In this document: positions 337-63,567 of the stretch, piece by piece
Layout of the letters: every line of letters starts with the position of its first letter
Numbering within the stretch: position 1 is the first letter of the stretch
Assembly (NCBI RefSeq): GCF_006345805.1
Contig: NW_021833033.1
Location: 22,291-86,290 of the forward strand
Source: Octopus sinensis
Taxonomy: Eukaryota
Length of the DNA stretch: 64,000 nucleotides
Reading direction: 5' to 3'
Translations under genes and position numbers: made by a program
The notes under the pieces: model-generated
Seen by the model: only the letters and a program-made list of their open reading frames with translations
What the model was told of the DNA's origin: nothing
The model's database searches: none

Positions 337-568
337 TATTTCTTTATTACCCACAAGGGGATAAACATAGAGGGGACAAATATGGACAGACATAGGTATT
401 AAGTCGATTACATCGACCCCAGTGCGTAACTGGTACTTTAATTTATCGACCCCGAAAGGATGAAAGGCAAAGTCGACCTCGGCGGAATTTGAACTCAGAA
501 CGTAACGGCAGACAAAATACCGCAAAGCATTTCGCCCGGCGTGTTAACGTTTCTGCCAGCTCGCCGCC
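337..568 (-). mobile_element. Full-length tRNA-derived SINE (family A) with 13-bp target-site duplication
   Basis: Minus-strand head GGCGGCGAGCTGGCAG..GAGTTCAAATTCC, core GTCGACTTTGCCTTTCATCC, tail ..GGGTAATAAAGAAATA; direct repeat TAAAATAGATACC at 324-336 and 569-581. Confidence 0.85.
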
Positions 569-821
569 TAAAATAGATACCAGTGTGGCACTGGGGTCGA
601 AGTACTCGATTTTGTGCCTCACTCGAACTAATTGGCCTTGGGTCAAAATTTGAAGCCATTATTGTCGTTGTTTTTCTTTTTGCTGTTAGAGTTATCACGT
701 TGATGAGGACGACAATAATGAGGAAGGAATATGGTGAGGATGGTTGTGGTAGCATTGGTGAATGGGGAGAAGGAGGAGGGAGAGGAAGTGGAGAAGGGGA
801 AGAAAAAGAAGAAGAAAAAGA

Positions 822-6854: not shown

Positions 6855-9800
6855 CTATACACATATTATATATGTATCTATTATGCATATATATATACAT
6901 ATATATATGCATATATATACACATATATATGTATATATTATATGTATATTGCGTGTGTGTGTATATATATATGGTGGTGTATGTATTTTTATATATATTT
7001 TTTTTTTTTTTTGTGGACACACCACCCACACACACACACCAACCTACCTCCACACGCACACACCCACCCACCTACCTCCCCCCACCCACCCACCCACCTA
7101 CCTCCCACACGCCTGTTCACACACACACATACGTAGACCCATCTACGTACATACATTCACACATTTAATCACACACACTACAGACATACTACCACACACT
7201 AACATACAAACCAACATGCACATACACACACACATACATACATACGCACACACATACATACTTACACACACACACACACACAACACGACATACATACAAA
7301 CAGACACCACACACACATACATACGCACATACAATACACACACACTCACACACACACCGCACGTACACTTCACACACACACATGCAAACATACATGTAGG
7401 CACTACATACATACATACCTACACATGCACACCCTTACACTGAATGCACAACACATACACCTTTTTGCATCCAGGAGCCCCACCCTCTTTTCTGCTTTCC
7501 GGTTTTGGCTGATGGATCCTCGGCTCCCGCGTAGCGGGCGTTCGAGGGCCTTTGCGCTCGCACGCCTTGGCGGCGCGCTGGCGGCTTGGTCGGCCCCTTG
7601 GGCTTGCGTTGTACTGCTTGTGCGTTGTGTGCGTGGGCGCGCTTCGTGTGTGTGGGCTTGCTTCGGATGTGCGCGTGCGTATGTATGCATACATACCCAC
7701 ACACTCGCATGCATCCCTACCCACACATACATACACGCACACCTCTCACACACACACACACACACATACCTGCACACACACACACACATACATACATACA
7801 CAACATACCTACTTCAGACATAACACAACACAGACATACACCCATACACTCACACTCACACCGCATACACACACCACACATACACACGCACACGTACACA
7901 TACACACACACCACCTACATACATACATTACACTTGTATACACACACACTTACATTCATACACACACACACCTAAACAGCCATACCCTCACTCAGACACA
8001 CACATCTACCTACACACACACACAAACACACACGGACACACACCCATACATACATACATCTACACACACACACGCCTACACACTACATACACACATACAA
8101 TCAACACACACACACATACACATATACACACATACGCACACAACACATATACTTATACACATGCACACACACACACACATACATACATACACCCATATAC
8201 ATACACACACACATACCCACATACTCCTATACGCACATACTACACCACAGACATACACACATACACACTCACAAACAACATACACACACACATACTTACA
8301 CACACACTCACCTGCACGCGCACCACACATCTGACAAACACCCATACACTCTCACACTCACATACGCACACACCACCACATAAACACGCACACGCACACG
8401 CACACACACACCTACACTCCCACACACATACACACGCACCTACATACACACACACGCACGCATACACACGCATACACACATACTTACACACGTACACACA
8501 CACCTACATACACATGCATACACACAACACACACAAACATGCACGGACACACCCAGACATACACACATACACCTATATACCACGCCCACACACACCTACA
8601 TACACACACATATACACACACGCCCACACACCTACATACACACACATACATACACACATACACGGACACCCCATACATACTTACATACATACACCTATAT
8701 ACACCACGCCTACACACCTACATACACACACATGCATACACACACACACACATGTACGCACTTACACACACATATACGCACATACATATATACCCACACA
8801 CATGCACACAACACACACACATACGCACATGCATGCATGCATGCACACGCGCACACCTACACTCATACACACACACACACGCACGTACACATACTACATA
8901 CACACACACACGCATACATACACCCTACACATACTGCATCCTACACCACATACATACACACTCACACATACATACACACACACACACTCACTCACACACC
9001 TGTATGTACGCGCCACACACATGCACATATACACACACTTCCCCACACCCACACGTACATACATACACACTCACACACACATACACACACACACACACAC
9101 ACGGACATACATCTATGTACACACATACATACACACATACTCTCACATACATTCATCGGACACACTACTGCCACCTGGACATATACACAGACACACTCAC
9201 ACATCCACACACATACATACTTACGCACATACTCGCAGGCGCGCGCACGCACGCGCTTGCGCCGGTTCACGCACGCATACGCTCCGCAGGCCCTCGCTCT
9301 TGGACCGACAAGACCTCCGCCCGTTCCTGGGACCGTCGCGTGTCGTTGGTTTTTCCCACGCCCGCCTCCGCGGGACCACTCTTCCATCTTCCCCTCACTG
9401 GAGTCCTTTTCCTTAACCCCCTTTTTCGTTACACACACCGCGCACACATATCACACACATTGCTTAAATATATACATTACTCTTACACACATTCAATCTA
9501 CTCTACTCGCCATTTATACACAACACGACACTGGACACACACACACACTACTACTCAACACACGCTGGCACGCTACATACGCCCCCACCCTTCCCCTCCC
9601 TCCTTCCTCCTTCCTTCTTTTTCTTACTACTGACCTTTGTCTGCTAAGCTGACCACTGTCCTCGCCCTACCTCACACGCCTACACACAGACGCACACACT
9701 AACACCACATATATATTTTTTTTTGTTTTTTTTTCATCGCCTCACACACACACATACACACACGCACACGCACACACTCACACATACACACCACATCTGT
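6650..9800. repeat. About 3 kb degenerate (TA)n/(CA)n compound microsatellite with two GC-rich islands
   Basis: Read directly; islands at ~7460-7680 and ~9230-9430. Confidence 0.9.
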
Positions 9801-11259: not shown

Positions 11260-11372
11260 GCTGCGGCCATGCTGCGGCCATGCTGCGGCCATGCTGCGGC
11301 CATGCTGCGGCCATGCTGCGGCCATGCTGCGGCCATGCTTCGGCCATGCTGCGGCCATGCTGGGGCACCGCC
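11260..11372 (+). repeat. 11-bp minisatellite (GCTGCGGCCAT)n, about 9 copies
   Basis: Tandem copies running into GCTGGGGCACCGCC, a motif found once in other interspersed repeats in this window. Confidence 0.9.
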
Positions 11373-11520: not shown

Positions 11521-11544
<24 letters not shown>

Positions 11545-11551
<7 letters not shown>

Positions 11552-12925
11552 TTAATAAGGGTGAGAGAATTAGATACTAATTTAATAGTATACCTATTCA
11601 ACAGCAAGTGGCCCAGTGCCCCGAGAAACCTGGATTATTATAATATTTTATAACATATAATATTTTATACAAAAATAAATATAAGAGAGTGGTCACTATG
11701 TGACTCACTCTAGCACTAGTAAATCCAAAAGGTTTCAACCACAAAAATACATGTTTCCAATGAAAGTCAGTACGATTGTTAGCTCACACGAACAGGGCAA
11801 ATAAAAAATAACAAAAATACAGATTATTTTGGGACAATTGTTTCGCTATTAATGAATTAAATGTAATTTTACTCACAAAAAACTCACTTGTAGCTCCTCA
11901 GCCAAAACTATCTGGATGAAATCCACTCAATCACACGCCAGATTTTACCATAACGATAAATACACGTGTGGTTCAATTGATTACATCCGACGTTATAATT
12001 CAAGTGCCCCTACCAACAGCGCGCCAAACCTTCACGGAAACAAATACTACTTTTAGAAATAAATGTAGCATAATTATAATTAATTAATAAGGGTGAGAGA
12101 ATTAGATACTAATTTAATAGTATACCTATTCAACACCATGTGGCCCAGTGCCCCGAGAAACCTGGATTATTATAATATTTTATAACATATAATATTTTAT
12201 ACAAAAATAAATATAAGAGAGTGGTCACTATGTGGCTCACTCTAGCACTAGTAAATCCAAAAGGTTTCAACCACAAAAATACATGTTTCCCATGAAAGTC
12301 AGTACGATTGTTAGCTCACACGAACAGGGCAAATAAAAAATAACAAAAATACAGATTATTTTGGGACAATTGTTTCGCTATTAATGAATTAAATGTAATT
12401 TTACTCACAAAAAACTCACTTGTAGCTCCTCAGCCAAAACTATCTGGATGAAATCCACTCAATCACACGCCAGATTTTACCATAACGATAAATACACGTG
12501 TGGTTCAATGATTACATCCGACGTTATAATTCAAGTGCCCCTACCAACAGCGCGCCAAACCTTCACGGAAACAAATACTACATTTAGAAATAAATGTAGC
12601 ATATTATAATTAATTAATAAGGGTGAGAGAATTAGATACTATTTAATAGTATACCTATTCAACACCAAGTGGCCAGTGCCCCGAGAAACCTGGATCATTA
12701 TAATATTTTATAACATATTATAATATTTTGTACAAAAATAAATAAGAGAGTGGTCACTATGTGGCTCACTCTAGCACTAGTAAATCCAAAAGGTTTCAAC
12801 CACAAAAATACATGTTTCCCATGAAAGTCAGTACGATTGTTAGCTCACACGAACAGGGCAAATAAAAAATAACAAAAATACAGATTATTTTGGGACAATT
12901 GTTTCGCTATTAATGAATTAAATGT
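11545..12925. repeat. Tandem array of a ~531-bp unit, about 2.6 copies
   Basis: TAATTAATTAATAAGGGTGAGAG recurs with GGG at 11559, 12091 and 12621; the units are near-identical. Confidence 0.95.
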
Positions 12926-12942
12926 ATATTCTATATATATAA

Positions 12943-30114: not shown

Positions 30115-33100
30115 GAACAATTTTTCAAAATTTTTTGTCGAAAATTTTCAAAGAATTATCAAAAAATCTTACAAAAATTTTGATTAAAATTTTCTAAAGA
30201 ATTTTCAAAAATTTTCGTGAAAATTGTCGAAAAAGTTTTCAAAAATTTTGGAGAAGTATTTTTGGCCAAAATTTTCAGAAAATTTTTATAAAATTTTGGT
30301 GAAAATTTTCAAAAAATTTTTCAAAATTTTTGGGGAAAATTTTCCAAAAATTTTTCTATAGTTTTGGGGAAAATTTTTTAAACTTTTTAAAAATTTGCGA
30401 AAAGTTTCGAAACATTCTTCAAAAATTTTTGAAAAATATTTTGAAAATTTTTGGCGAAAATTTTCAAAACATTTTTCAAAATTTTTGGGGAAAATTTTCA
30501 AAAACTTTTTCTCAAATTTTGGGGAAAATTTTCAAAAAATTTTTCTCAAATTTTGGGGAAAATTTTCAAAAAATTTTTCAAAAATCTTTGGAGAGGTGCC
30601 AAAATCACAAAGTATGGAAAGCCAGCGGTGCCAAAATCACCGAAAATTTTACCCAAAAGTTTTTCGAAAATTTTCCCCAAAAATTTTTCGAAAATTTCCA
30701 CCGAAGATTTTCCCCAAAAATTTTTCGAAAATTTTCCCCGAGCTAAAAATAGAATTTTAGGTGGCTGCTTCTGCTGCTTTCTGTGTATAGATTGAATTCT
30801 GGTTTAATATTACAGTCAAGATGCCTCACGATCAACGATACACCAGATTCTGCACTACACTTAACACCTATGACCATATCGATGTTATAGACTTCAGCAT
30901 ATGGAGAATATTCGTAATTGGGTTTTCGAATTTTCACACCGAAAATTTTCCCCAAAAATTTTTCGAGAATTTTCACCGAAAATTTTCCACTAAAATTTTT
31001 CGAAAGTTTTCAACCGAAAATTTACAAAAAGATCTTTCGAAAATTTTCCCCAAAGTATGGAATGCCAGCGGTGCCAAAATCACAAAGTATGGAAAGCCAG
31101 CTGTGCCAAAATCACAAAGTATGGAAAGCCACGATGCCAAATCACTAAGTATGGAAAGCTAGCGGGGCCAAAATCACAAAGTATAGAAGGCCAGAGGTGC
31201 AAAATGATAAAGTATGGATGGCCAATGGTGCCAAAATCGCAGAAAAATTTTACCCGAAAATTTTTGGAAATTTTACCCAAAAATTTTCCAAAGTTTTACC
31301 CAAATTTTTTCGAAAATTTTCCCCAAAAATTTTTCGAAAATTTTCGCCAAAAATTTTACCCAAAAATTTTACGAAAATTTTTCGAAAATTTTCCCCAAAA
31401 ATTTTTCGAAAATTTTCCCCAAAAATTTTACGAAAGTTTTCCGCAAAAATTTTTCGAAAATTTTCACAAAAAATTTTACCAAAAAATTTTAGAGAATTTT
31501 CACCGAAAATTTTGTCCAAAAATATTTCGATAATTTTCATCGAAGATTTTCCCAAAAAATTTTTGGAAAATTTTCACTGAAAATTTTACCCAAAAATTTT
31601 ACGAAAATTTTTCGCAAAAATTTTTCGAAAATTTCCACCGAAGATTTTCCCCAAAAATTTTTGGAAAATTTTCCCCGAGCTAAAAATAGAATTTTAGGTG
31701 GCTGCTTCTGCTGCTTTCTGTGTATAGATTGAATTCTGGTTTAATATTACAGTCAAGATGCCTCACGATCAACGATACACCAGATTCTGCACTACACTTA
31801 ACACCTATGACCATATCGATGTTTATAGACTTCAGCATATGGAGAATATTCGTAATATGGGTTTTCGAAATTTTCACCGAAAATTTTCCCCAAAAATTTT
31901 TCGAGAATTTTCACCGAAAATTTTCCACTAAAATTTTTCGAAAGTTTTCACCGAAAAATTTACAAAAAGATCTTTCGAAAATTTTCCCCAAAGTATGGAA
32001 TGCCAGCGGTGCCAAAATCACAAAGTATGGAAAGCCAGCTGTGCCAAAATCACAAAGTATGGAAAGCCAGCGATGCCAAAATCACTAAGTATGGAAAGCT
32101 AGCGGGGCCAAAATCACAAAGTATAGAAGGCCAGAGGTGCCAAAATGATAAAGTATGGATGGCCAATGGTGCCAAAATCGCAGAAAAATTTTACCCGAAA
32201 ATTTTTGGAAATTTTACCCCAAAAATTTTTCCAAAGTTTTACCCAAATTTTTTCGAAAATTTTCCCAAAAATTTTTCGAAAATTTTCGCCAAAAATTTTA
32301 CCCAAAAATTTTTAGAAAATTTTCACCGAAAATTTTACTCAAAAATTTTTCGAAAATTTTCCCCAAAAATTTTACGAAAGTTTTCCGCAAAAATTTTTCG
32401 AAAATTTTCACAAAAAATTTTACCAAAAAATTTTAGAGAATTTTCACCGAAAATTTTGTCCAAAAATATTTCGATAATTTTCATCGAAGATTTTCCCAAA
32501 AAATTTTTGGAAAATTTTCACTGAAAATTTTACCCAAAAATTTTACGAAAATTTTTCGCAAAAATTTTTCGAAAATTTTCACCGAAAATTTTACCCAAAA
32601 ATTTTCCCCGAGCTAAAAATAGAATTTTAGGTGGTTGCTTCTGCTGCTTTCTGTGTATAGAGTAGAATCTGGTGTATCGTTGATCGTGAGGTATCTTGAC
32701 TGTAATATTAAACCAGAATTCACTCTATACACAGAAAGCAGCGGAAGCAGCCACCTAAAATTCTATTTTTAGCTATAACATCTATTTTTAGCTCGGGGAA
32801 AATTTTCGAAAAATTTTTGGGGAAAGTTTTCGGTGGAAATTTTCCAAAAGTGTCCTTGGGTAAATTTTTCGGTGAAAATTTTCGGAAAATTTTTAGTGAA
32901 AATTTTCGAAAAATTTTGGGGGAAAATTTTTGGGGAAAATTTTCGATGAAAATTATCGAAAAATTTTTGGACAAAATTTCGGTGAAAATTCTCTAAAAAT
33001 TTTTGGGGGAAAATTTTCTGGAAAATTTTCGAAAAAATTTGGGTAAAATTTTGGAAAAATTTTGGGGGAAAGTTTTCGAAAAATTTTCGGGTAAAATTTT

Positions 33101-34060
33101 CTGTGATTTTGGCACCATTGGCCTTCCATACTTTATGATTTTGGCACCGCTAGCTTTCCGTACGTTGTGATTTTGGCACCGCTGGCTTTCCATACTTTGT
33201 GATTTTGGCACCGCTGGCTTTCCATAGTTTGTGATTTTGGCACCGCTGGTTTTCCATACTTTGTGATTTTGGTACCGCTGGGGAGAAAATTCGAAAGGTC
33301 TTTTTGTAAATTTTTCGGTGCAAACTTTCGAAAAGTTTTAGTGGAAAATTTTCGGTGATAATTTTCGAAAACCCATCTAACGAATATGCTCCATATGCTG
33401 AAGTCTATAAACGTCGATATGGTCATAGTTGTTAAGTGTAGAGTAGAATCTGGTGTATCGTTGATCGTGAGGCATCTTGACTGTAATATTAAACCAGGAT
33501 TCACTCTATACACAGAAAGCAGCAGAAGCAGCCACCTAAAATTCTATTTTTAGCCATAACATCTATTTTCGGTGGAAATTTTCGAAAAATTTTTGGGTAA
33601 AATTTTCGGTGAAAATTTTCCAAAAATCTTTGGAGAAAATTTTCAAAAAATTTTTCAAAAATTTTTGGGGAATATTTTCATAAAATTTTACAAAACTTTT
33701 GGGGGAAAATTTTCAAACAATTTTTCAAAAATCTTTGGAGAAAATTTTCAAATATTTTTGGGGAAAAGTTTAAAAAAATCTTTCTATAGTTTGGGGGAAA
33801 ATTTTTTTAATATTTTTTAAAAATTTGGGGAAAACTTTCCAAAAATCCTTCAAAAATCTTTGGCGAAAATTTTTGAAAAATGTTTTGAAAATTTTCTGCA
33901 AAAGTTTTCGAAAAATTTTGGGGAAAATTTTCAAAAAATTTTTCAAAAATTTTTGGGGAAAATTTTCAAAAAATTTTCTAAAATTTGGGGGAAAATTTTC
34001 AATACATTTTTCAAAAATTGTTGGGGAAAATTTTCAAAGCGTTTTTCAAAAATTCTTTTT
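30115..34060. repeat. Modular A-tract satellite / foldback-like structure
   Basis: AAAATTTT-based arrays, 32-bp tandem repeats and a ~190-bp module, arranged as ~935-bp direct units plus an inverted block. Confidence 0.9.
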
Positions 34061-34475
34061 GGACTTTCTTTTATCGAAAGCATTTTAACAAAAATGCTTC
34101 CGTAAAGACGGTGAAAATTTTGTCAATTTCCCCAAACCGGGACACATTTCAATTTTTAAACAATAACCAAACATTTTCGGAGAAGGGTTACGGTTTACAA
34201 TTATTTACCAAATGCAACACAACAACCCTTCCCTGACGAGGAACCAACAAACGTGATTACAATAGTCAAACAGTAATAATAATAACAAACCTTTTTAATT
34301 TATCCCCATTTATGTCAAACCACTTATTCAAGTTCAAGTCATTGATGCAATTTTATACGAATTGCTAATACACACACACACACACACATAGTAAGGGTGA
34401 AAAATAGAATATTAATTTGATTAATATGAATTGAAAACCAGTGGTTTAGCATATAAGACCATAGCGGATCTTCTT

Positions 34476-34849: not shown

Positions 34850-35100
34850 GGGCGACTTCTTTCATATTTTAAACCGTCGAGCTGCCAGAATCGTTAGCAC
34901 ACCGGACGAAATGCTTAGCGCTATTTCGTCTTCCGCTAAGTTCTGAGTTCAAATCCCACCGAGGTCGACTTTGCCTTTCATCTTTTCGGGGTCGGTAAAA
35001 TTAAGTACCAGTGAAATACTGTAATTTACTAGTTCCCTCTTCAGGTGTCTGCCAATTTGACCGTGTGTTAAGGCAGCACAATTGGCCATTTTGTCTCTTC
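34849..35100 (+). mobile_element. SINE family A copy
   Basis: GAGCTGCCAGAATCGTTAGCAC..GAGGTCGACTTTGCCTTTCATC. Confidence 0.8.
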
Positions 35101-35199: not shown

Positions 35200-35775
35200 G
35201 TTTTTTGTTGTCTTTGTCGTTGTTGCTGTTGGCGTTTGTTGCTGTTGTTGTTGTTGTTGTTGATGATGATGAAGAGGAGGAGGAGGATGATGACGACGGA
35301 CGATGTCCATGATGATGGCGATGATGTTGTTGATGATGATGATGAAGAGGAGGAGGAGGAGGATGACGGTGGTGATGGTGACGATGTCCATGATGTTTAT
35401 GGTGATGGTGATGCTGATAATGATAATGATGTTGATGATGATGATGACGGACGATGTCCCTGATGATGGTGGTGATGTTGTTGATGATGAGGAGGATGAG
35501 GAGGATGAAGATGGTGACGGTGGTGATAGTGACGATGTCCATGACGTTGATGATGATGCTGATGATGAAGATGATGAGGAGGAGGAGGATGATGATGGTG
35601 GTGGTGGTGTAGGTGGTGGTGGTGTAGGTGGTGGTGGTGGTGGTGGTGGTGGTGGTGACGATGTCCATGATGATGATGACGACGACGACGATGATAACGA
35701 CGACGGCTACAAGGATGTTGATGACGATGATGACGCTGACGTTGACGCTGACGACGACGACGATGATGTTTATGT
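35200..35775. repeat. Compound (GTT)/(GAT)/(GAG)/(GGT) microsatellite with a higher-order duplication
   Basis: Motif GACGATGTCC(A/C)TGA occurs five times. Confidence 0.85.
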
Positions 35776-36829: not shown

Positions 36830-37575
36830 ATGGTGTTGTTGCTGCTGCTGCTGGTAATGCTGTTGCTGTTGTTGTTGTTGATGGTGGTGGTGGTGGTTGT
36901 GGGTCTGGTGGTGGTAGTGTTAGTGGTGTTGGTGGTAGTGTTAGTGGTGGTGGTGGTGGTGGTGGTGGTGGTGGTAGTGGTAGTGGTGGTGATGGTGGTG
37001 GTGGTGGTGGTGGTGGTAGTGGTGGTGGTAGTGGTGGTGGTGGCGGTAGTAGTGTTAGTGGTGGTGGTACTGGTGGTGGTGGTGGTGGTGGTGGTGGTGG
37101 TAGTAGTAGTAGTGTTGGTGGTGGTGGTGGTGGTGGTGGTGGTGGTGGGGTGGTGGTGGTAGTAGTAGTGTTGGTGGTGGTGTGGTGGTGGTGGTGGTGG
37201 TGGTGGTGGTGGTGGTGGTGGTGGTGGTGGTGGTGTGGTGTGGTGGTGGTAGTAGTGTTAGTGGTGGTGGTACTGGTGGTGGTGGGGTGGTGGTGGGGTG
37301 TGGTGTGGTGGTGGTGGTGGGTGGTGGTGGTGGTGGTGGTGGTGGTGGTGGTGGCGGTAGTAGTGTTAGTGGTGGTGGTGGTGGTGGTGGTGGTAGTAGT
37401 AGTAGTGTTAGTGGTGGTGGTAGTGGTGGTGGTGGCGGTAGTAGTGTTAGTGGTGGTGGTACTGGTGGTGGTGGTGGTGGTGGTGGTGGTAGTAGTAGTG
37501 TTGGTGGTGGTGGTGGTGGTGGTGGTAGTAGTAGTAGTGTTGGTGGTGGTGGTGGTGGCGGTGGTGGTGGTGCTT
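36830..37575. repeat. (GGT)n-based compound microsatellite with repeated AGTAGTGTTAGT interruptions
   Basis: Read directly from the sequence. Confidence 0.9.
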
Positions 37576-39290: not shown

Positions 39291-39528
39291 CATTTCTTTA
39301 CTACCCGCAAGGGGCTACACACAGAGAGGACAATCAAGGACAGGCAAACGGATTAAGTCGATTACATCGACACCAGTGCGTAACTGGTACTTAATTTATC
39401 GACCCCAGAAGGATGAAAGGCAAAGTCGACCGCGGTGGAATTTGAACTCAGAACGTAACGGCAGATGAAATACCGCTTAGTATTTTGCCCGGCGTGCTAA
39501 CGTTTCTGCCAGCTTGCCACCTTAATAC
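39291..39528 (-). mobile_element. Full-length SINE family A with 13-bp TSD
   Basis: AGATAAATATAAC at 39278-39290 and 39529-39541; head and tail as in 337-568. Confidence 0.85.
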
Positions 39529-40789: not shown

Positions 40790-41140
40790 ATACCGGATAT
40801 TTCGTCTGTCTTTACGTTCTGAGTTCAAATTCTGCCGAGGTCGACTTTGCCTTTCATCCTTTCGCCGTCGATTAAATAAGTACCAGTTACGCACTGGGGT
40901 CGATATAATCGACTTAATCTGTTTGTTTGTCCTTGTTTGTCCCTTCTGTGTTTAGCCCCTTGTGGGTAGTAAAGAATTAGGTATTTCGTCTGTCTTTACG
41001 TTCTGTGTTCAAATTCCACCGAGGTCGAATTTGCCTTTCATCATTTCAGTGTCGATAAATTAAGTACCAGCTGCGTATCTAATTAAGTGGCTCCTCTCCC
41101 AAAAATTCGGTCCTAGTGCCTAGAGTAGAAAAGAATATTT
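40790..41140 (+). mobile_element. Nested SINE family A pair
   Basis: Two cores; the first copy's tail GGGTAGTAAAGAATTA runs into GGTATTTCG of the second. Confidence 0.75.
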
Positions 41141-41264: not shown

Positions 41265-41625
41265 AAATATTCTTTTCTACACTAGGCTACACAAGGCCCG
41301 AAATTTTGGGGGAGGAGGCCAGTTGATTAAATTTACACCAGTACACAACTGGTACTTAATTATCGACCCTGAAAGGATGAAAGACAAAGTAGACCTTGGC
41401 GGAATTTGAACTCAGAACGTAGCGGCAGATGAAATACCTGTTTCTTTACTACCCACAAGGGGCTAAACACAGAGAGGACGAACAGGTACTTATTTAATCG
41501 ACCCCGAAAGGATGAAAGGCAAGTTGACTTCGGCGGAATTTGAAACATAGAACTTAAAGACAAACGAAATACCACTAAGAATTTCGCCCGGCGCGCTCAC
41601 GTTTCTGCTAGCTCGGCGCCTTCAG
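41265..41625 (-). mobile_element. Nested SINE family A pair
   Basis: Mirror arrangement of 40790-41140 on the minus strand. Confidence 0.75.
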
Positions 41626-48815: not shown

Positions 48816-50307
48816 ACACCTTATTATCCTTGTAGCTTCCTTAAGTGGTTTCACCTCTCAAGATCCTTTATTGACTTTGACGTATATCTGGGTTTGCTTT
48901 ATGTCTTATTTTTAAAGCTATGGAAAGATAACTTTATTTTATTGTCTCTTTTCTTCTAACTTCCATCCTTCTCATAAACTCGATTTTCCTCTGCTTCTTG
49001 TATAGACATATTTTTTTTCTTCTCTTTGTTTCCTGACAGTTATACAGCTTTTACATACATGTTTTATAATAGCGTTTTTGTCTATGTCTGGACATTTTTA
49101 TTTCCCTAGTTTATCCATTTAAACATAAAGCTTCTGATATTCGCTTATTCGTTGGCATATAAATGTAATATTTCCTCTGTTTATCCTTCTCCTTATGTGA
49201 TATATTTGTTTTTAAGGCTTTGTTTGGCTTCTTATATGTAATACGGCAACTCATTTATCCAAAGACCATCTTTAAATTTATTTATGCGTTCATTTGTTTT
49301 GTTTCTATTTGTTTTTCTTCCGTGCTCTTTTATTAAGTGACATGTTTCTGTGATACCATTTTCACGTCAGCATTGGTTCGAGGTTTTCCATTGATGATGT
49401 AATAATATCAACACTCGGCGTTCCGGGCATTGAGTGTGTCAATATCTAACTATTTATTACCGTTATTAACATGAATAAGAGAAGGCTGCAATAGAATGAC
49501 ATGATAGCGCGTCCCATATGAGGCCTTGCGGTTTTACTTTCGGCTGCTCTAAGTTCAAATCCCGAGTATCAATAAACAACATAATAAAAACATGAATGGA
49601 CCGAAATGAAAGAGCGTTGGACGAGGTATCTTATAGTGTTCTAACTTTTTTGTGTGCGACATAAGTTCAAATTCCAATCCCCGTTATCAGCTTCCTCCTG
49701 GCGGATGTCAGTTATGAAGCATGTCATTGGCTAACGGAGATGTGATCCGAATATCCTTTCTGCTATAAGCAGAGTACCTGAAATGTATGGGATTTCATCG
49801 CACCCCAATGCTCAATTGATACTTGTTTTATCGACCCTGAAAAGATGAAAGGCAAAGTGGAACCTCGGCGACATTTGAACTCAGAACGTAATGTCGGAAG
49901 AAATGCCACTAATCATTTTGTCCAGCATGATAACGACTCAGCCAGCTTGTCGTCTTGATGCGACCCTAATATCACACAGAGCGAGATATCGATTGATGCA
50001 GTATCTCCGATGCATCACTCAGGGCAAACGTGCTCTGAAAACGCCGGCATAAACACTAGTATTGAACGCTAAAAACTACCTTATTCCATAGAAATGGAAT
50101 GGGAAAGCGAATAGGGAGTCGAATAACACGTAAAATGCGTTTATTTACCCTTACATTCAGAGTTCAAGATCCCTTGTATTCAAATTTGTCTGTTTTCAAT
50201 CGACATTTGATGAAATTGTGGTTGACTTATTCCGTTATAGACCACGCGACATGTTAGTAACAACGACTATTTCTGTTGTTTTATTATTATTATTCTGTAC
50301 TTACATA

Positions 50308-50478
50308 GGCGCAGGAGTGGCTGTGTGGTAAGTACCTTGTTTACCAACCACATGGTTCCGAGTTCAGTCCCACTGCGTGGCACCTTGGGCAAGTGTCTTC
50401 TACTATAGTCTCGGGCCGACCAAAGCCTTGTGAGTGGATTTGGTAGACGGAAACTGAAAGAAGCCCGTCGTATATATG

Positions 50479-50517
<39 letters not shown>

Positions 50518-50730
50518 TTGTGCGTCTGTGTCTGTCCCCCTAGCATTGCTTGACAACTGATGCTGGTGTGTTTATGTCCCCGTTACTTAGCGGTTCGGCA
50601 AAAGAGACCGATAGAATAAGTACTGGGCTTACAAAAAAAGAATAAGTCCCGGGGTCGAGTTGCTCGATTAAAGGCGGTGCTCCAGTCTGGCCGCAGTCAA
50701 ATGACTGAAACAAGTAAAAGAGAGTAAAAA
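50308..50730 (+). mobile_element. Full-length SINE family B
   Basis: GGCGCAGGAGTGGCTGTGTGGTAAG head, internal (TA)/(TG) tract, end CAGTCAAATGACTGAAACAAGTAAAAGAG. Confidence 0.9.
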
Positions 50731-52654: not shown

Positions 52655-52877
52655 GCTGTCTGGTTATGAAGCTCGCTTTGCAGCCACGAGGTTTCACGGT
52701 TCAGTCCAAGCGCAGGAGTGGCTGTGTGGTAAGTAGCTTGCTAAACAACCACATGGTTCCGGGTTCAGTCCCACTGCGTGGCATCTTGGGCAAGTGTCTT
52801 CTGCTATAGACCCGGGCCGAATAATGCCTTGTGAGTGGATTTGGTAGACGGAAACTGAAAGAAGCCTGTAGTATATA

Positions 52878-52931
<54 letters not shown>

Positions 52932-61714: not shown

Positions 61715-61969
61715 TACTTTGTTTTTTACTCTTTTACTTGTTTCAGTCATTTGACTGCGGCCATGCTGGAGCACCACCTTTAGTCGAGCAAATCGACCCC
61801 AGGATTTATTATTTGTAAGCCTAGTACTTATTTTATCGGTCCCTTTCCGAAAAGCTAATGTTATGGGGACGTAAACACACCACATCGGTTATCAAGTGAT
61901 GTTGGGGGGACAAACACAGACATACAACATATACACACACATACATATATATATCACATATATATCATC

Positions 61970-62034
<65 letters not shown>

Positions 62035-62055
62035 ATATATATCATATATATATAT

Positions 62056-62100
<45 letters not shown>

Positions 62101-62245: not shown

Positions 62246-63567
62246 TATTTCATTATTTCATTAAAATTTGCCATAATGTCACTACAAGGAGCAGCTTGCG
62301 AGCTGGATATATACATTGATAAGGTGAATGATGAAGTAAGGATGATATTGATGAGAGAAGGCAAAAATGCCCGCCGATTTTCTTCTCTAAAACATTGTTT
62401 TTTTTTTTCAACCTCTCACAACAGTTTTTATAGTTTTGGGACTTAATAGTCCATTACAAATATTAACATGCAAAAATATACAAAATATACAATCAACACT
62501 AGTCCATTTAAAAATGAGGCGCTGGGCCTCTTACACTTTATAACAGTGAGGCTTTTCAACCTCTTGTCAATTTTTCCACCTCAACGAAGTATTGAACATC
62601 TTACTACAGTTCTTACAATTATTGGATTTAATAGTCAATAACATGCAATAATAAACAATGAAATATACAATATATTATCAACACTAGTCCACTTATAAAT
62701 GAGGCGCTGAGCCTCTTACACATTATAACACTGAGGCTTTCAAATTCTTGCCAATTTTCCACATAATTGCTTGTGTCCGTGTATTCCACCGTAGGAAGGT
62801 CTGTAAAATTTAAGCGATAAAACAGCGGTTGCAGGCCGCAAAAGTTACTGTTACGAGCGCACAACTCAGCGTATCAGGTCGAATAACATTACCAGGTCTT
62901 GTGTTCTATGAGGCGACGAAACATGCGATACCGTCTCTGATCATCACCCACAGTATCATTGCATCGCCGTGCGATAATGAAGACAAGGTGGAGATTGAGC
63001 TGTGTTGTTGGCATGCTAGATACAGCAGTGAAGGCAAGAAAAGAAAAGCCGAGAAACGGCTGAAGATAAAGATTCTAAGACAAGACAAAGAAACATGTTT
63101 GACATTGTAATTTGCAATTCTTCGCACGACAAACGTCATTAGATGCAAGTTATAAATTATCTATAACGACTATTTGAAACAACTGCTGAGATGAGCTTCG
63201 ATTATGTTGAATCTACGAAAGACAAAACAATAATGAAAAAAAACCTTCGATCAATCTTAAGGACTTGGGCCTTTGCTGGCTGCACTAAGCCCAAAATTGA
63301 TCGCAGGTATTTCTGAAATGAGTCAACTAGATGGCCTATTAGACCAGATAAAATGATAGATCAGATGGAAGGGATCAGTCTTTTCGAGTCCCTATCAGAT
63401 CCAGATTGAGATATTTTTCTCCTATTCATGGATGCATAACTCAATTTGTAGTTTCTTGTTTTCAATTTCATCTTGATTGAATTCTTGTTTGTTTTATGTA
63501 AATTTATCTCTGCGGATGACTAAACTACATCCAGTTGTGGAGCCCTAGTTCGGGAGTTCGAGCGTTT

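What the first reader, a model, noticed from the sequence alone, without database searches (positions are those of the whole stretch)
30115..34060. 4-kb modular foldback-like element: three module types, ~935-bp higher-order units and an inverted block
Seen: three modules interleave: (i) AAAATTTT-tract arrays, (ii) 32-bp repeat arrays, (iii) a ~190-bp module starting GAGCTAAAAATAGAATTTTAGGTGGCTGC. Module iii starts at 30740, 31677 and 32610 (periods 937 and 933), then appears inverted at ~32660-32795 and ~33365-33555. The two outer ~500-bp A-tract blocks are in the same orientation and share the marker CTATAGTT(T)TGGGG (30356, 33784). Established: Foldback-type transposons such as Drosophila FB have long inverted arms built of short tandem repeats. 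Inference: a non-autonomous Foldback-like element or complex satellite family. No transposase is visible.
Basis: partly seen in the sequence, partly recalled or inferred. Interest (0 to 1): 0.7.

Follow-up and report, generated by a model that had tools for sequence, protein, structure and literature searches.

The report
Composite tandem repeat with inverted arm
A 4-kb stretch of non-coding repetitive DNA, built from three interleaved repeat types, was copied head-to-tail and flipped once at a small built-in hairpin site, so it looks like an ordinary, locally rearranged satellite-type repeat, and nothing here shows it to be a jumping gene.

Summary
Window 30115-34058 holds AAAATTTT-tract arrays, 32-bp arrays and a 186-bp unique module (iii). 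These are organised as two ~935-bp units that are 99.1% identical, followed by an inverted copy of one unit that is 91.7% identical.

New findings:
- The orientation switch at 32662/32663 lies inside an imperfect, interrupted inverted repeat within module iii (stems about 18-20 nt, loop about 40 nt).
- The centre is exactly the product expected if a strand snapped back at that repeat: 160 of 168 columns match, with no indel at the junction.
- The three forward copies and the two inverted copies of iii form two sub-variants, so each arm was homogenised separately after the inversion.
- The two outer ~480-bp tracts are direct copies of one block (78% identical). They have no terminal inverted repeats and no target-site duplication.

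No transposase, RNA family or other copy occurs in the 64 kb. No searchable collection or paper holds the sequence, but none of those collections covers eukaryotic repeats.

Best reading: a local composite tandem repeat, shaped by slippage, unequal exchange and one fold-back template switch. Membership of the Foldback transposons fails on the features I could test. Whether the modules are dispersed across the genome could not be tested. Interest is low.

The parts
30115..30590 (.). Outer tract, left. An A4T4 array with a 34-35-bp period and spacers 'C' and 'GGGG' (G orientation, the same as the right outer tract).
   Evidence: TRF period 34, score 260. Spacer counts and CpG o/e 1.37. Direct match to 33576-34027 at 78.5%.
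30591..30739 (+). Truncated unit 0: 1.5 forward 32-mers followed by 100 bp of inner-type (CG-spacer) tract. Junction J1 with the outer tract lies at 30590/30591.
   Evidence: Read directly. 86% complementary to 33031-33151 (pair I24). J1 shows at most 3 bp of microhomology (AGA) and no palindromic signature.
30740..31676 (+). Unit 1 (937 bp): module iii variant A 30740-30925; short tract 30926-31050 (37-bp period); 32-mer x6 31051-31238; long tract 31239-31676 (24/37-bp periods).
31677..32609 (+). Unit 2 (933 bp): module iii variant A 31677-31862; short tract 31863-31988; 32-mer x6 31989-32179; long tract 32180-32609.
   Evidence: 99.1% identical to unit 1 at aligned bases (8 mismatches, 34 gap columns, mostly 1-bp).
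32610..32662 (+). Module iii positions 1-53, forward. This is the last segment of the left arm.
32663..32795 (-). Module iii variant B, positions 112->1, plus a variant-specific ~20-bp prefix. Positions 32663-32722 are the single-copy centre (iii 55-112), which includes the ~40-nt loop of the internal inverted repeat. Junction J2 lies at 32662/32663.
   Evidence: The predicted snap-back product matches at 160/168 columns. Hairpin -88.4 kcal/mol, z = -18.1.
32796..33371 (-). Inverted unit body: long tract 32796-33101 (about 120 bp shorter than in the forward units); 32-mer x5.6 33102-33281; short tract 33282-33371.
   Evidence: Colinear with unit 2 at 91.7% identity. The indels are multiples of the tract period. 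Position-specific 32-mer variants are shared with the forward arrays.
33372..33569 (-). Module iii variant B, full length, with the same prefix (AAAATAGATGTTAT) as the other inverted copy.
   Evidence: 95.1% identical to variant A. It shares G53, ACTCTAC at positions 113-119 and the prefix with the copy at 32663-32795.
33570..34058 (.). Outer tract, right. The first ~50 bp are inner-type and the rest is outer-type (35-bp period, C spacer). It is a direct copy of the left outer tract.
   Evidence: The flank beyond 34058 is unique within 300 bp.

Best explanation
This is a local, non-coding composite tandem repeat (a small higher-order satellite-type array). It is not shown to be a mobile element. 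I infer the following build-up.

(1) A ~12-bp motif with a self-complementary AAAATTTT core expanded by replication slippage into arrays with 24-, 35- and 37-bp super-periods. A 32-bp minisatellite expanded beside them.

(2) The whole package became a ~935-bp unit: the 186-bp module iii, a short tract, six 32-mers and a long tract.

(3) During replication or break repair, a 3' end snapped back at an imperfect interrupted inverted repeat inside module iii. The repeat pairs positions 43-63 with 104-121, leaving a ~40-nt loop. Copying the other strand then produced an inverted duplicate of at least one unit.

(4) The two arms diverged by about 8% and were homogenised separately, giving variant A in the forward arm and variant B in the inverted arm.

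(5) Most recently, unequal exchange or slippage duplicated the unit in the forward arm (units 1 and 2).

Shown directly: the architecture, the identities, the position and exact sequence of the junction, and the two variants. Inferred: the order of events and the enzymology. The second orientation switch (J1, 30590/30591) and the direct duplication of the outer tracts are not explained by a single fold-back. They need a further template switch or a secondary rearrangement.
For: - Units 1 and 2 are 99.1% identical over 935 bp.
- The inverted arm is colinear with a whole unit at 91.7% identity. Its indels are multiples of the tract period.
- Position-specific 32-mer variants are shared between the arms (GGCCAATGG in the last repeat, GCTAGCGG in the fourth). 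The array order therefore predates the inversion.
- Module iii has an internal interrupted inverted repeat, stronger in variant B (-8.3 against -4.5 kcal/mol). The observed centre equals iii(1-112) followed by the reverse complement of iii(1-54), matching 160/168 columns with no indel at the join.
- A short interrupted inverted repeat with a 40-80-nt spacer that stays single-copy at the centre is the published signature of fold-back/ODIRA junctions (PMC10766186, read).
- Both inverted iii copies share three derived characters that all three forward copies lack.
- The locus lacks terminal inverted repeats and a target-site duplication. The ORFs in the window translate only as low-complexity sequence, and the nine non-repeat ORFs plus one repeat ORF scanned against Pfam gave no transposase or other supra-threshold family. 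No Rfam family is detected, nor any tRNA. No module recurs elsewhere in the 64 kb.
Against: - Only one locus could be examined. No eukaryotic genome or repeat library (Dfam, Repbase) was available, so a dispersed family cannot be excluded.
- J1 has no palindromic signature, and the outer tracts are direct repeats. Neither is predicted by a simple fold-back, so the history is incomplete.
- Variant B's better inverted repeat could be a consequence of the palindrome (quasi-palindrome correction) rather than its cause.
- Most differences between units 1 and 2 are 1-bp indels. That pattern could reflect long-read consensus error, although nothing here shows how the assembly was made. If it does, the unit copy number is the least secure feature.
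Confidence: 0.6

Rival explanations
1. The locus is one, possibly rearranged, copy of a genome-wide family of non-autonomous mobile elements that carry internal tandem repeats. Candidates are Foldback/Tetris-like elements or Helentron-associated HINE-like elements. The 935-bp unit or the whole complex would then be moved by a transposase encoded elsewhere.
For: - The modular make-up (a unique module plus simple-repeat tracts plus a short satellite-like array) resembles Tetris/FB and oyster Cg_HINE elements (PMC4079207; PMC7492417).
- The inverted arms are built of tandem repeats.
- Whole Helitron-type elements can also occur in tandem.
- The surrounding window is packed with interspersed repeats, so a multi-copy origin for module iii is plausible a priori.
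Against: - The outer ends are direct repeats, not inverted ones.
- There is no target-site duplication, and there is no subterminal inverted repeat pair beyond a 7-mer expected by chance.
- There is only one kind of unique module rather than a left/right flank pair.
- The inversion junction is explained by an internal inverted repeat.
- No second copy or fragment occurs in 60 kb of flanking DNA.
- No transposase is present.
Confidence: 0.2
2. The inversion, or the number of units, is an assembly artefact. The cause would be a chimeric fold-back long read or a mis-joined repeat.
For: - Palindromic junctions and near-identical tandem units are classic trouble spots for assemblers.
- Units 1 and 2 differ mostly by 1-bp indels, which may be consensus errors.
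Against: - A chimeric fold-back read would give near-identical arms. Here the arms differ by 8% in substitutions and by several 11-36-bp indels.
- The two inverted iii copies, about 700 bp apart, share derived characters absent from all forward copies.
- The junction sits at a natural inverted repeat.
Confidence: 0.07
3. The dyad is a selected structure. It could be a source of hairpin RNA feeding small-RNA pathways, or a structural DNA element (phased A-tracts or a cruciform affecting chromatin), as proposed for the macro-dyad satellite arrays of Tribolium.
For: - The centre has a very stable predicted hairpin (-88 kcal/mol, z = -18).
- The arms are about 0.9-1 kb long at 92% identity.
- A4T4 cores are spaced regularly at 11-13 bp.
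- Tribolium satellite arrays show conserved inversion sites that are argued to be functional (PMC13081366).
Against: - There is no evidence of transcription or conservation.
- All Rfam hits are sub-threshold miRNA-hairpin noise caused by the self-complementary AAAATTTT core.
- The arms are decaying (8% divergence plus indels), as expected for neutral DNA.
- The A-tract spacing of about 12 bp is out of phase with the ~10.5-bp helical repeat (established knowledge), so strong planar bending is not expected.
Confidence: 0.05

Closest known systems
Foldback transposons (Drosophila FB; Tetris of D. virilis, PMC4079207)
   Same: - Inverted arms are built of tandem repeats.
- The design is modular.
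- There is no coding capacity.
- The internal repeats can seed satellite-like arrays.
   Different: - FB/Tetris have long inverted repeats at the two ends of the element, a middle domain and 8-10-bp target-site duplications.
- Here the two ends are direct repeats and no duplication is present.
- The 'middle' is only the ~40-60-nt spacer of an internal inverted repeat.
- One arm continues as a head-to-tail array.
Helentron-associated non-autonomous elements (HINE / DINE-1 / Cg_HINE of the Pacific oyster, PMC7492417)
   Same: - A short satellite-like array is embedded next to unique sequence and microsatellite-like tracts.
- There is no target-site duplication.
- The surroundings are T/A-rich.
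- Tandem arrangement of whole elements is known for the superfamily.
   Different: - HINEs have two different flanking modules with 11-12-bp subterminal inverted repeats and a 3' palindrome, all in one fixed orientation. None of these was found at the ends of the unit or of the complex.
- The only palindrome near an end (34077-34098) lies outside the repeat and has no partner.
Fold-back / ODIRA inverted duplications and triplications (PMC10766186, PMC4689423, PMC3907307)
   Same: - The inversion junction lies at a short interrupted inverted repeat whose ~40-nt spacer stays single-copy at the centre.
- The arms are colinear.
- The overall orientation pattern is direct-inverted-direct.
- The second junction looks secondarily rearranged, as those papers describe for unstable palindromes.
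   Different: - Those events are described for unique-sequence loci tens to hundreds of kb long, in yeast, human disease and cancer.
- Here the substrate is a 1-kb repeat unit.
- The second junction (J1) shows no inverted-repeat signature.
- The first 'direct' copy would be represented only by the outer tract.
Satellite arrays with dyad symmetry (Tribolium madens, T. freemani, T. castaneum; PMC13081366)
   Same: - Tandem arrays switch orientation at a defined inversion site that can form a long-stem hairpin.
- Two repeat types are interleaved.
   Different: - The Tribolium arrays span kilobases to megabases, with thousands of conserved inversion sites in (peri)centromeric regions.
- Here there is a single 4-kb locus of unknown genomic context with about 3.3 units.

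Membership tests
Foldback (FB/Tetris-type) transposon | Long terminal inverted repeats at the two ends of the element | tested here: not met
   The outer 476- and 489-bp blocks match in direct orientation (78.5%). A local alignment of the two ends scores higher in direct orientation (35) than in inverted orientation (24).
Foldback (FB/Tetris-type) transposon | Inverted arms composed of tandem repeats | tested here: met
   The internal arms (31677-32662 and 32723-33570) are colinear in inverted orientation and consist of 12/24/37-bp and 32-bp tandem repeats plus module iii.
Foldback (FB/Tetris-type) transposon | Target-site duplication of 8-10 bp flanking the element | tested here: not met
   The only shared words of 8 bp or more across the two boundaries are tract motifs (TTTTTCAAAA and the like). 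The 16-bp CAAAAATCTTTGGAGA at 30579 and 33622 recurs at 33729, so it is a repeat motif and not a duplication.
Foldback (FB/Tetris-type) transposon | Multiple dispersed copies with conserved termini, and an autonomous partner encoding a transposase | not testable with these tools
   No eukaryotic genome or repeat library was available. No further copy occurs in the 64 kb. There were no hits in metagenome, prokaryote-genome or viral collections, in the protein collection or in paper texts.
Helentron-associated non-autonomous element (HINE) | Two distinct flanking modules with 11-12-bp subterminal inverted repeats and a 3' palindrome, with the central tandem repeat between them | tested here: not met
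   There is only one unique module (iii). The best inverted word between the boundaries is a 7-mer, which is expected by chance. The hairpin at 34077-34098 lies outside the repeat and has no matching subterminal repeat.
Composite (higher-order) tandem repeat / satellite-type array | Head-to-tail repetition of a composite unit, with higher identity between units than between the sub-repeats inside them | tested here: met
   Units 1 and 2 are 99.1% identical. Inside them the 32-mers match at 83-86% and the tract repeats at 64-73%.
Composite (higher-order) tandem repeat / satellite-type array | Long arrays or high genomic abundance (satellite DNA in the strict sense) | not testable with these tools
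   Only about 2.2 forward and 1.1 inverted units are seen at this locus. Genome-wide abundance is unknown.
Fold-back / ODIRA-type inverted duplication | Junction at a pre-existing short interrupted inverted repeat, with its spacer kept single-copy at the centre | tested here: met
   The inverted repeat pairs iii 43-63 with 104-121 and has a ~40-nt loop. The predicted product, iii(1-112) plus the reverse complement of iii(1-54), matches the observed centre at 160/168 columns with no indel at the join.
Fold-back / ODIRA-type inverted duplication | A second inversion junction also at a short inverted repeat (for an intact inverted triplication) | tested here: not met
   J1 (30590/30591) joins the outer tract to a forward 32-mer with at most 3 bp of shared sequence and no palindrome. 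A secondary rearrangement would have to be assumed.

The most novel reading that the evidence does not exclude
The locus is one copy of an undescribed, genome-wide family of modular non-autonomous elements in a cephalopod-like genome. In this reading, A4T4 tracts and 32-bp arrays act as amplifiable building blocks for new satellites. The internal inverted repeat in module iii would repeatedly generate dyads (conserved inversion sites) that could yield hairpin RNAs.
Probability: 0.12. Interest if true: 0.45.

Novelty: new member of a known kind. Interest (0 to 1): 0.2.

Why it matters
If the reading is right, the locus is a clean small-scale example of how a satellite-type array acquires dyad symmetry. 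A short interrupted inverted repeat inside the repeat unit serves as the turn-around point, and the arms are then homogenised independently. That links the fold-back/ODIRA mechanism, known from yeast, human disease and tumours, to ordinary repeat evolution in an invertebrate-like genome. It is useful as an annotation and as a warning about a difficult assembly spot. It does not open a new question. It would become more interesting only if the same junction recurs at many loci.

Tried and rejected
1. **Outside copies, by several routes.**
   - Exact-product look-ups of three ORFs from the repeat and three from the flanks found nothing.
   - A protein search with a 288-aa conceptual translation of one unit gave 0 hits.
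   - DNA pattern scans of metagenome, prokaryote-genome and viral contigs with module iii, 32-mer and tract motifs gave 0 hits.
   - A string search of paper texts gave 0 hits.
   - These collections do not cover eukaryotic repeats, so the negatives say little about novelty.
2. **RNA gene or SINE origin.** Rfam gave only sub-threshold miRNA-hairpin matches, caused by the self-complementary AAAATTTT core. No tRNA was found. Rejected.
3. **Coding potential.** Long ORFs cross the tracts only because AAAATTTTC-type repeats lack stop codons. They have no Pfam family and no homologue. Rejected.
4. **Simple inversion of a segment of a uniform array.** Undoing it does not restore a regular array at either junction (worked through). 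Rejected.
5. **Intact ODIRA-type inverted triplication.** The first direct copy lacks the unit, and J1 lacks an inverted repeat. It fits only with extra deletions, so it is kept as a partial analogy.
6. **The 16-bp direct repeat CAAAAATCTTTGGAGA at the inner/outer transitions as a target-site duplication.** Rejected, because the motif recurs inside the right tract and the two outer tracts align in register as copies of one block, not as halves of a split array.
7. **Identifying the organism.**
   - A weak RRP40_S1 Pfam hit at 62814-63107 had no homologue.
   - A SINE-derived peptide had none either, and SINE strings were not found in papers.
   - From memory, two interspersed repeats resemble abundant octopus SINEs. 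This is a lead only and was not tested.
Full report
**Setting.** The 64-kb window is AT-rich (35% G+C) and crowded with microsatellites. It has no tRNA, no Rfam family above threshold and no convincing protein-coding ORF. Several interspersed repeat families recur in it. It reads as intergenic or intronic DNA of a repeat-rich animal genome. I could not establish the organism.

**Check of the observation.**
- Module iii (186 bp) occurs as two full forward copies at 30740 and 31677, which are 99.4% identical.
- A forward fragment (positions 1-52) starts at 32610.
- Inverted copies lie at 32664-32774 and 33380-33554. E-values run from 1e-22 to 1e-105.
- Tandem Repeats Finder reports 32-bp arrays at 31051-31238, 31989-32179 and 33102-33281, and A/T-tract arrays with periods of 12, 24, 34-35 and 37 bp.
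- AAAATTTT occurs 134 times in the window against 6.0 +/- 2.6 in shuffles, and 128 of these lie inside 30127-34034. Its permuted form TTTTAAAA is almost absent from the tracts.
- The marker CTATAGTT(T)TGGGG sits at 30356 and 33784.
- None of the modules occurs elsewhere in the window.

**Anatomy.** From left to right on the + strand:
- 30115-30590: outer tract.
- 30591-30739: a truncated unit (1.5 32-mers plus 100 bp of tract).
- 30740-31676: unit 1.
- 31677-32609: unit 2.
- 32610-32662: iii positions 1-53.
- 32663-32795: iii positions 112->1 in reverse.
- 32796-33371: the reverse body of one unit.
- 33372-33569: a full reverse iii.
- 33570-34058: outer tract.

Each unit consists of iii, a ~125-bp tract, six 32-mers and a ~430-bp tract. 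Units 1 and 2 are 99.1% identical at aligned bases. Most of their differences are single-base indels. The inverted arm aligns colinearly with unit 2 over the whole unit at 91.7% identity, and its indels of 11-36 bp are multiples of the tract period. The order of 32-mer variants is partly shared between the arms: the last repeat carries GGCCAATGG and the fourth carries GCTAGCGG. The internal order of the array therefore predates the split of the arms.

**Two kinds of tract.** The inner tracts have the spacer CG (TTTTCGAAAA) and a CpG observed/expected ratio near 3. The outer tracts have the spacer C (TTTTCAAAAA) and a ratio of 1.0-1.4. The window average is 0.92. A single CG-to-CA change turns the inner motif into the outer one. 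I therefore infer, without proof, that the outer tracts are an older, decayed version of the same repeat. The two outer tracts align in register, in direct orientation, at 78%. They are two copies of one ~470-bp block, not two halves of a split array and not inverted termini.

**The inversion junction.** Module iii contains an imperfect interrupted inverted repeat. GTGTATAGAGTGAATTCTGG (positions 43-63) pairs with CCAGATTCTACTCTACAC (positions 104-121), leaving a loop of about 40 nt. The repeat is stronger in the variant carried by the inverted copies (-8.3 against -4.5 kcal/mol). Read on the minus strand, the centre of the complex is iii 1-112 followed directly by the reverse complement of iii 54-1. 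That is the product expected if a strand folded back on this repeat and was extended. A model product built from the full inverted copy matches the observed centre in 160 of 168 columns, with no indel at the join. As single-stranded DNA the centre folds at -88.4 kcal/mol, z = -18. Short interrupted inverted repeats with 40-80-nt spacers that remain single-copy at the junction are the published signature of fold-back/ODIRA events (PMC10766186; see also PMC4689423 and PMC3907307, listed).

**Two variants of module iii.** The three forward copies are one variant (A). The two inverted copies are another (B). Variant B shares a ~20-bp prefix duplication (AAAATAGATGTTAT), a G at position 53 and ACTCTAC at positions 113-119. 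Each arm has therefore been homogenised on its own since the inversion. This also argues against a chimeric-read artefact, which would give near-identical arms.

**What remains unexplained.** The left orientation switch (J1, 30590/30591) joins the G-oriented outer tract to a forward 32-mer, with at most 3 bp of shared sequence and no palindrome. The direct duplication of the outer tracts also does not follow from a single fold-back. A simple inversion does not restore a regular array. An intact inverted triplication does not fit without extra deletions. The overall pattern is direct-inverted-direct, with one palindromic and one non-palindromic junction. That is what the ODIRA authors describe as a secondarily rearranged triplication. 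I offer it as an analogy, not as a demonstration.

**Transposon tests.** Foldback elements are defined by long inverted repeats at their ends, a middle domain and 8-10-bp target-site duplications (PMC4079207). Here the ends are direct repeats, no duplication is present and the flanks share nothing beyond tract motifs. HINE elements need two different flanking modules with subterminal inverted repeats and a 3' palindrome (PMC7492417), and these were not found. No transposase or other domain is encoded. Dispersal across the genome, the decisive feature, could not be tested. All searches outside the window were negative, but they were made in collections that do not hold eukaryotic repeats.

**Verdict.** The best explanation (confidence 0.6) is a local composite tandem repeat shaped by slippage, one fold-back template switch at an internal inverted repeat, separate homogenisation of the two arms and a recent unit duplication. 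The rivals are:
- a copy of a dispersed modular mobile element (0.2);
- an assembly artefact (0.07);
- a selected dyad structure or hairpin-RNA source (0.05).

The closest known analogues are the dyad-symmetric satellite arrays of Tribolium (PMC13081366) and fold-back/ODIRA junctions. The finding is a new member of a known kind and of low general interest.

Noticed in passing
window 400-575, 34880-35012 (-), 39354-39516, 40798-41070, 41288-41438, 49791-49947: A ~170-bp interspersed repeat family with 6-9 matches per copy inside the 64 kb. From memory it resembles an abundant octopus SINE, but this was not tested.
   Followed up: partly
window 50312-50521, 52713-52921, ~61860-62100: A ~200-bp repeat that looks tRNA-related (GGTTCCGGGTTCAGTCCC...) and ends in (TA)n(TG)n microsatellites. 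It is probably a SINE family. ARAGORN calls no tRNA, and a peptide translated from it had no homologue.
   Followed up: partly
window 11543-11865, 12075-12397, 12601-12926: Three copies of a ~320-bp sequence spaced about 530 bp apart. This is a second, unrelated tandem-like repeat.
   Followed up: no
window 7722-9102; 36882-37572; 950-1329; 35205-35768; 11260-11366: Unusually long simple-repeat blocks: 1.4 kb of CA-rich repeat with strong GC skew; 0.7 kb of (TGG)n; (ATG/GAC)n blocks; and an 11-bp repeat GCTGCGGCCAT x9.7.
   Followed up: no
window 34077-34098 and 34107-34121: A perfect 9-bp-stem hairpin, AAGCATTTT-AACA-AAAATGCTT, lies 20 bp beyond the right end of the tract. It is followed by an isolated inner-type motif, CGGTGAAAATTTTG. 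The true right boundary of the repeat may therefore lie near 34125.
   Followed up: partly
window 62814-63107 (+): A sub-threshold Pfam match to the RRP40 S1 domain (E = 2.8e-4, below the gathering score). The protein search found no homologue. It is probably spurious, or possibly a decayed exon.
   Followed up: yes
window 30740-32609 (unit 1 against unit 2): 34 of the 42 differing columns between the two units are gap columns, mostly 1-bp indels, some of them in base runs. This may reflect consensus errors in the assembly rather than real divergence.
   Followed up: no
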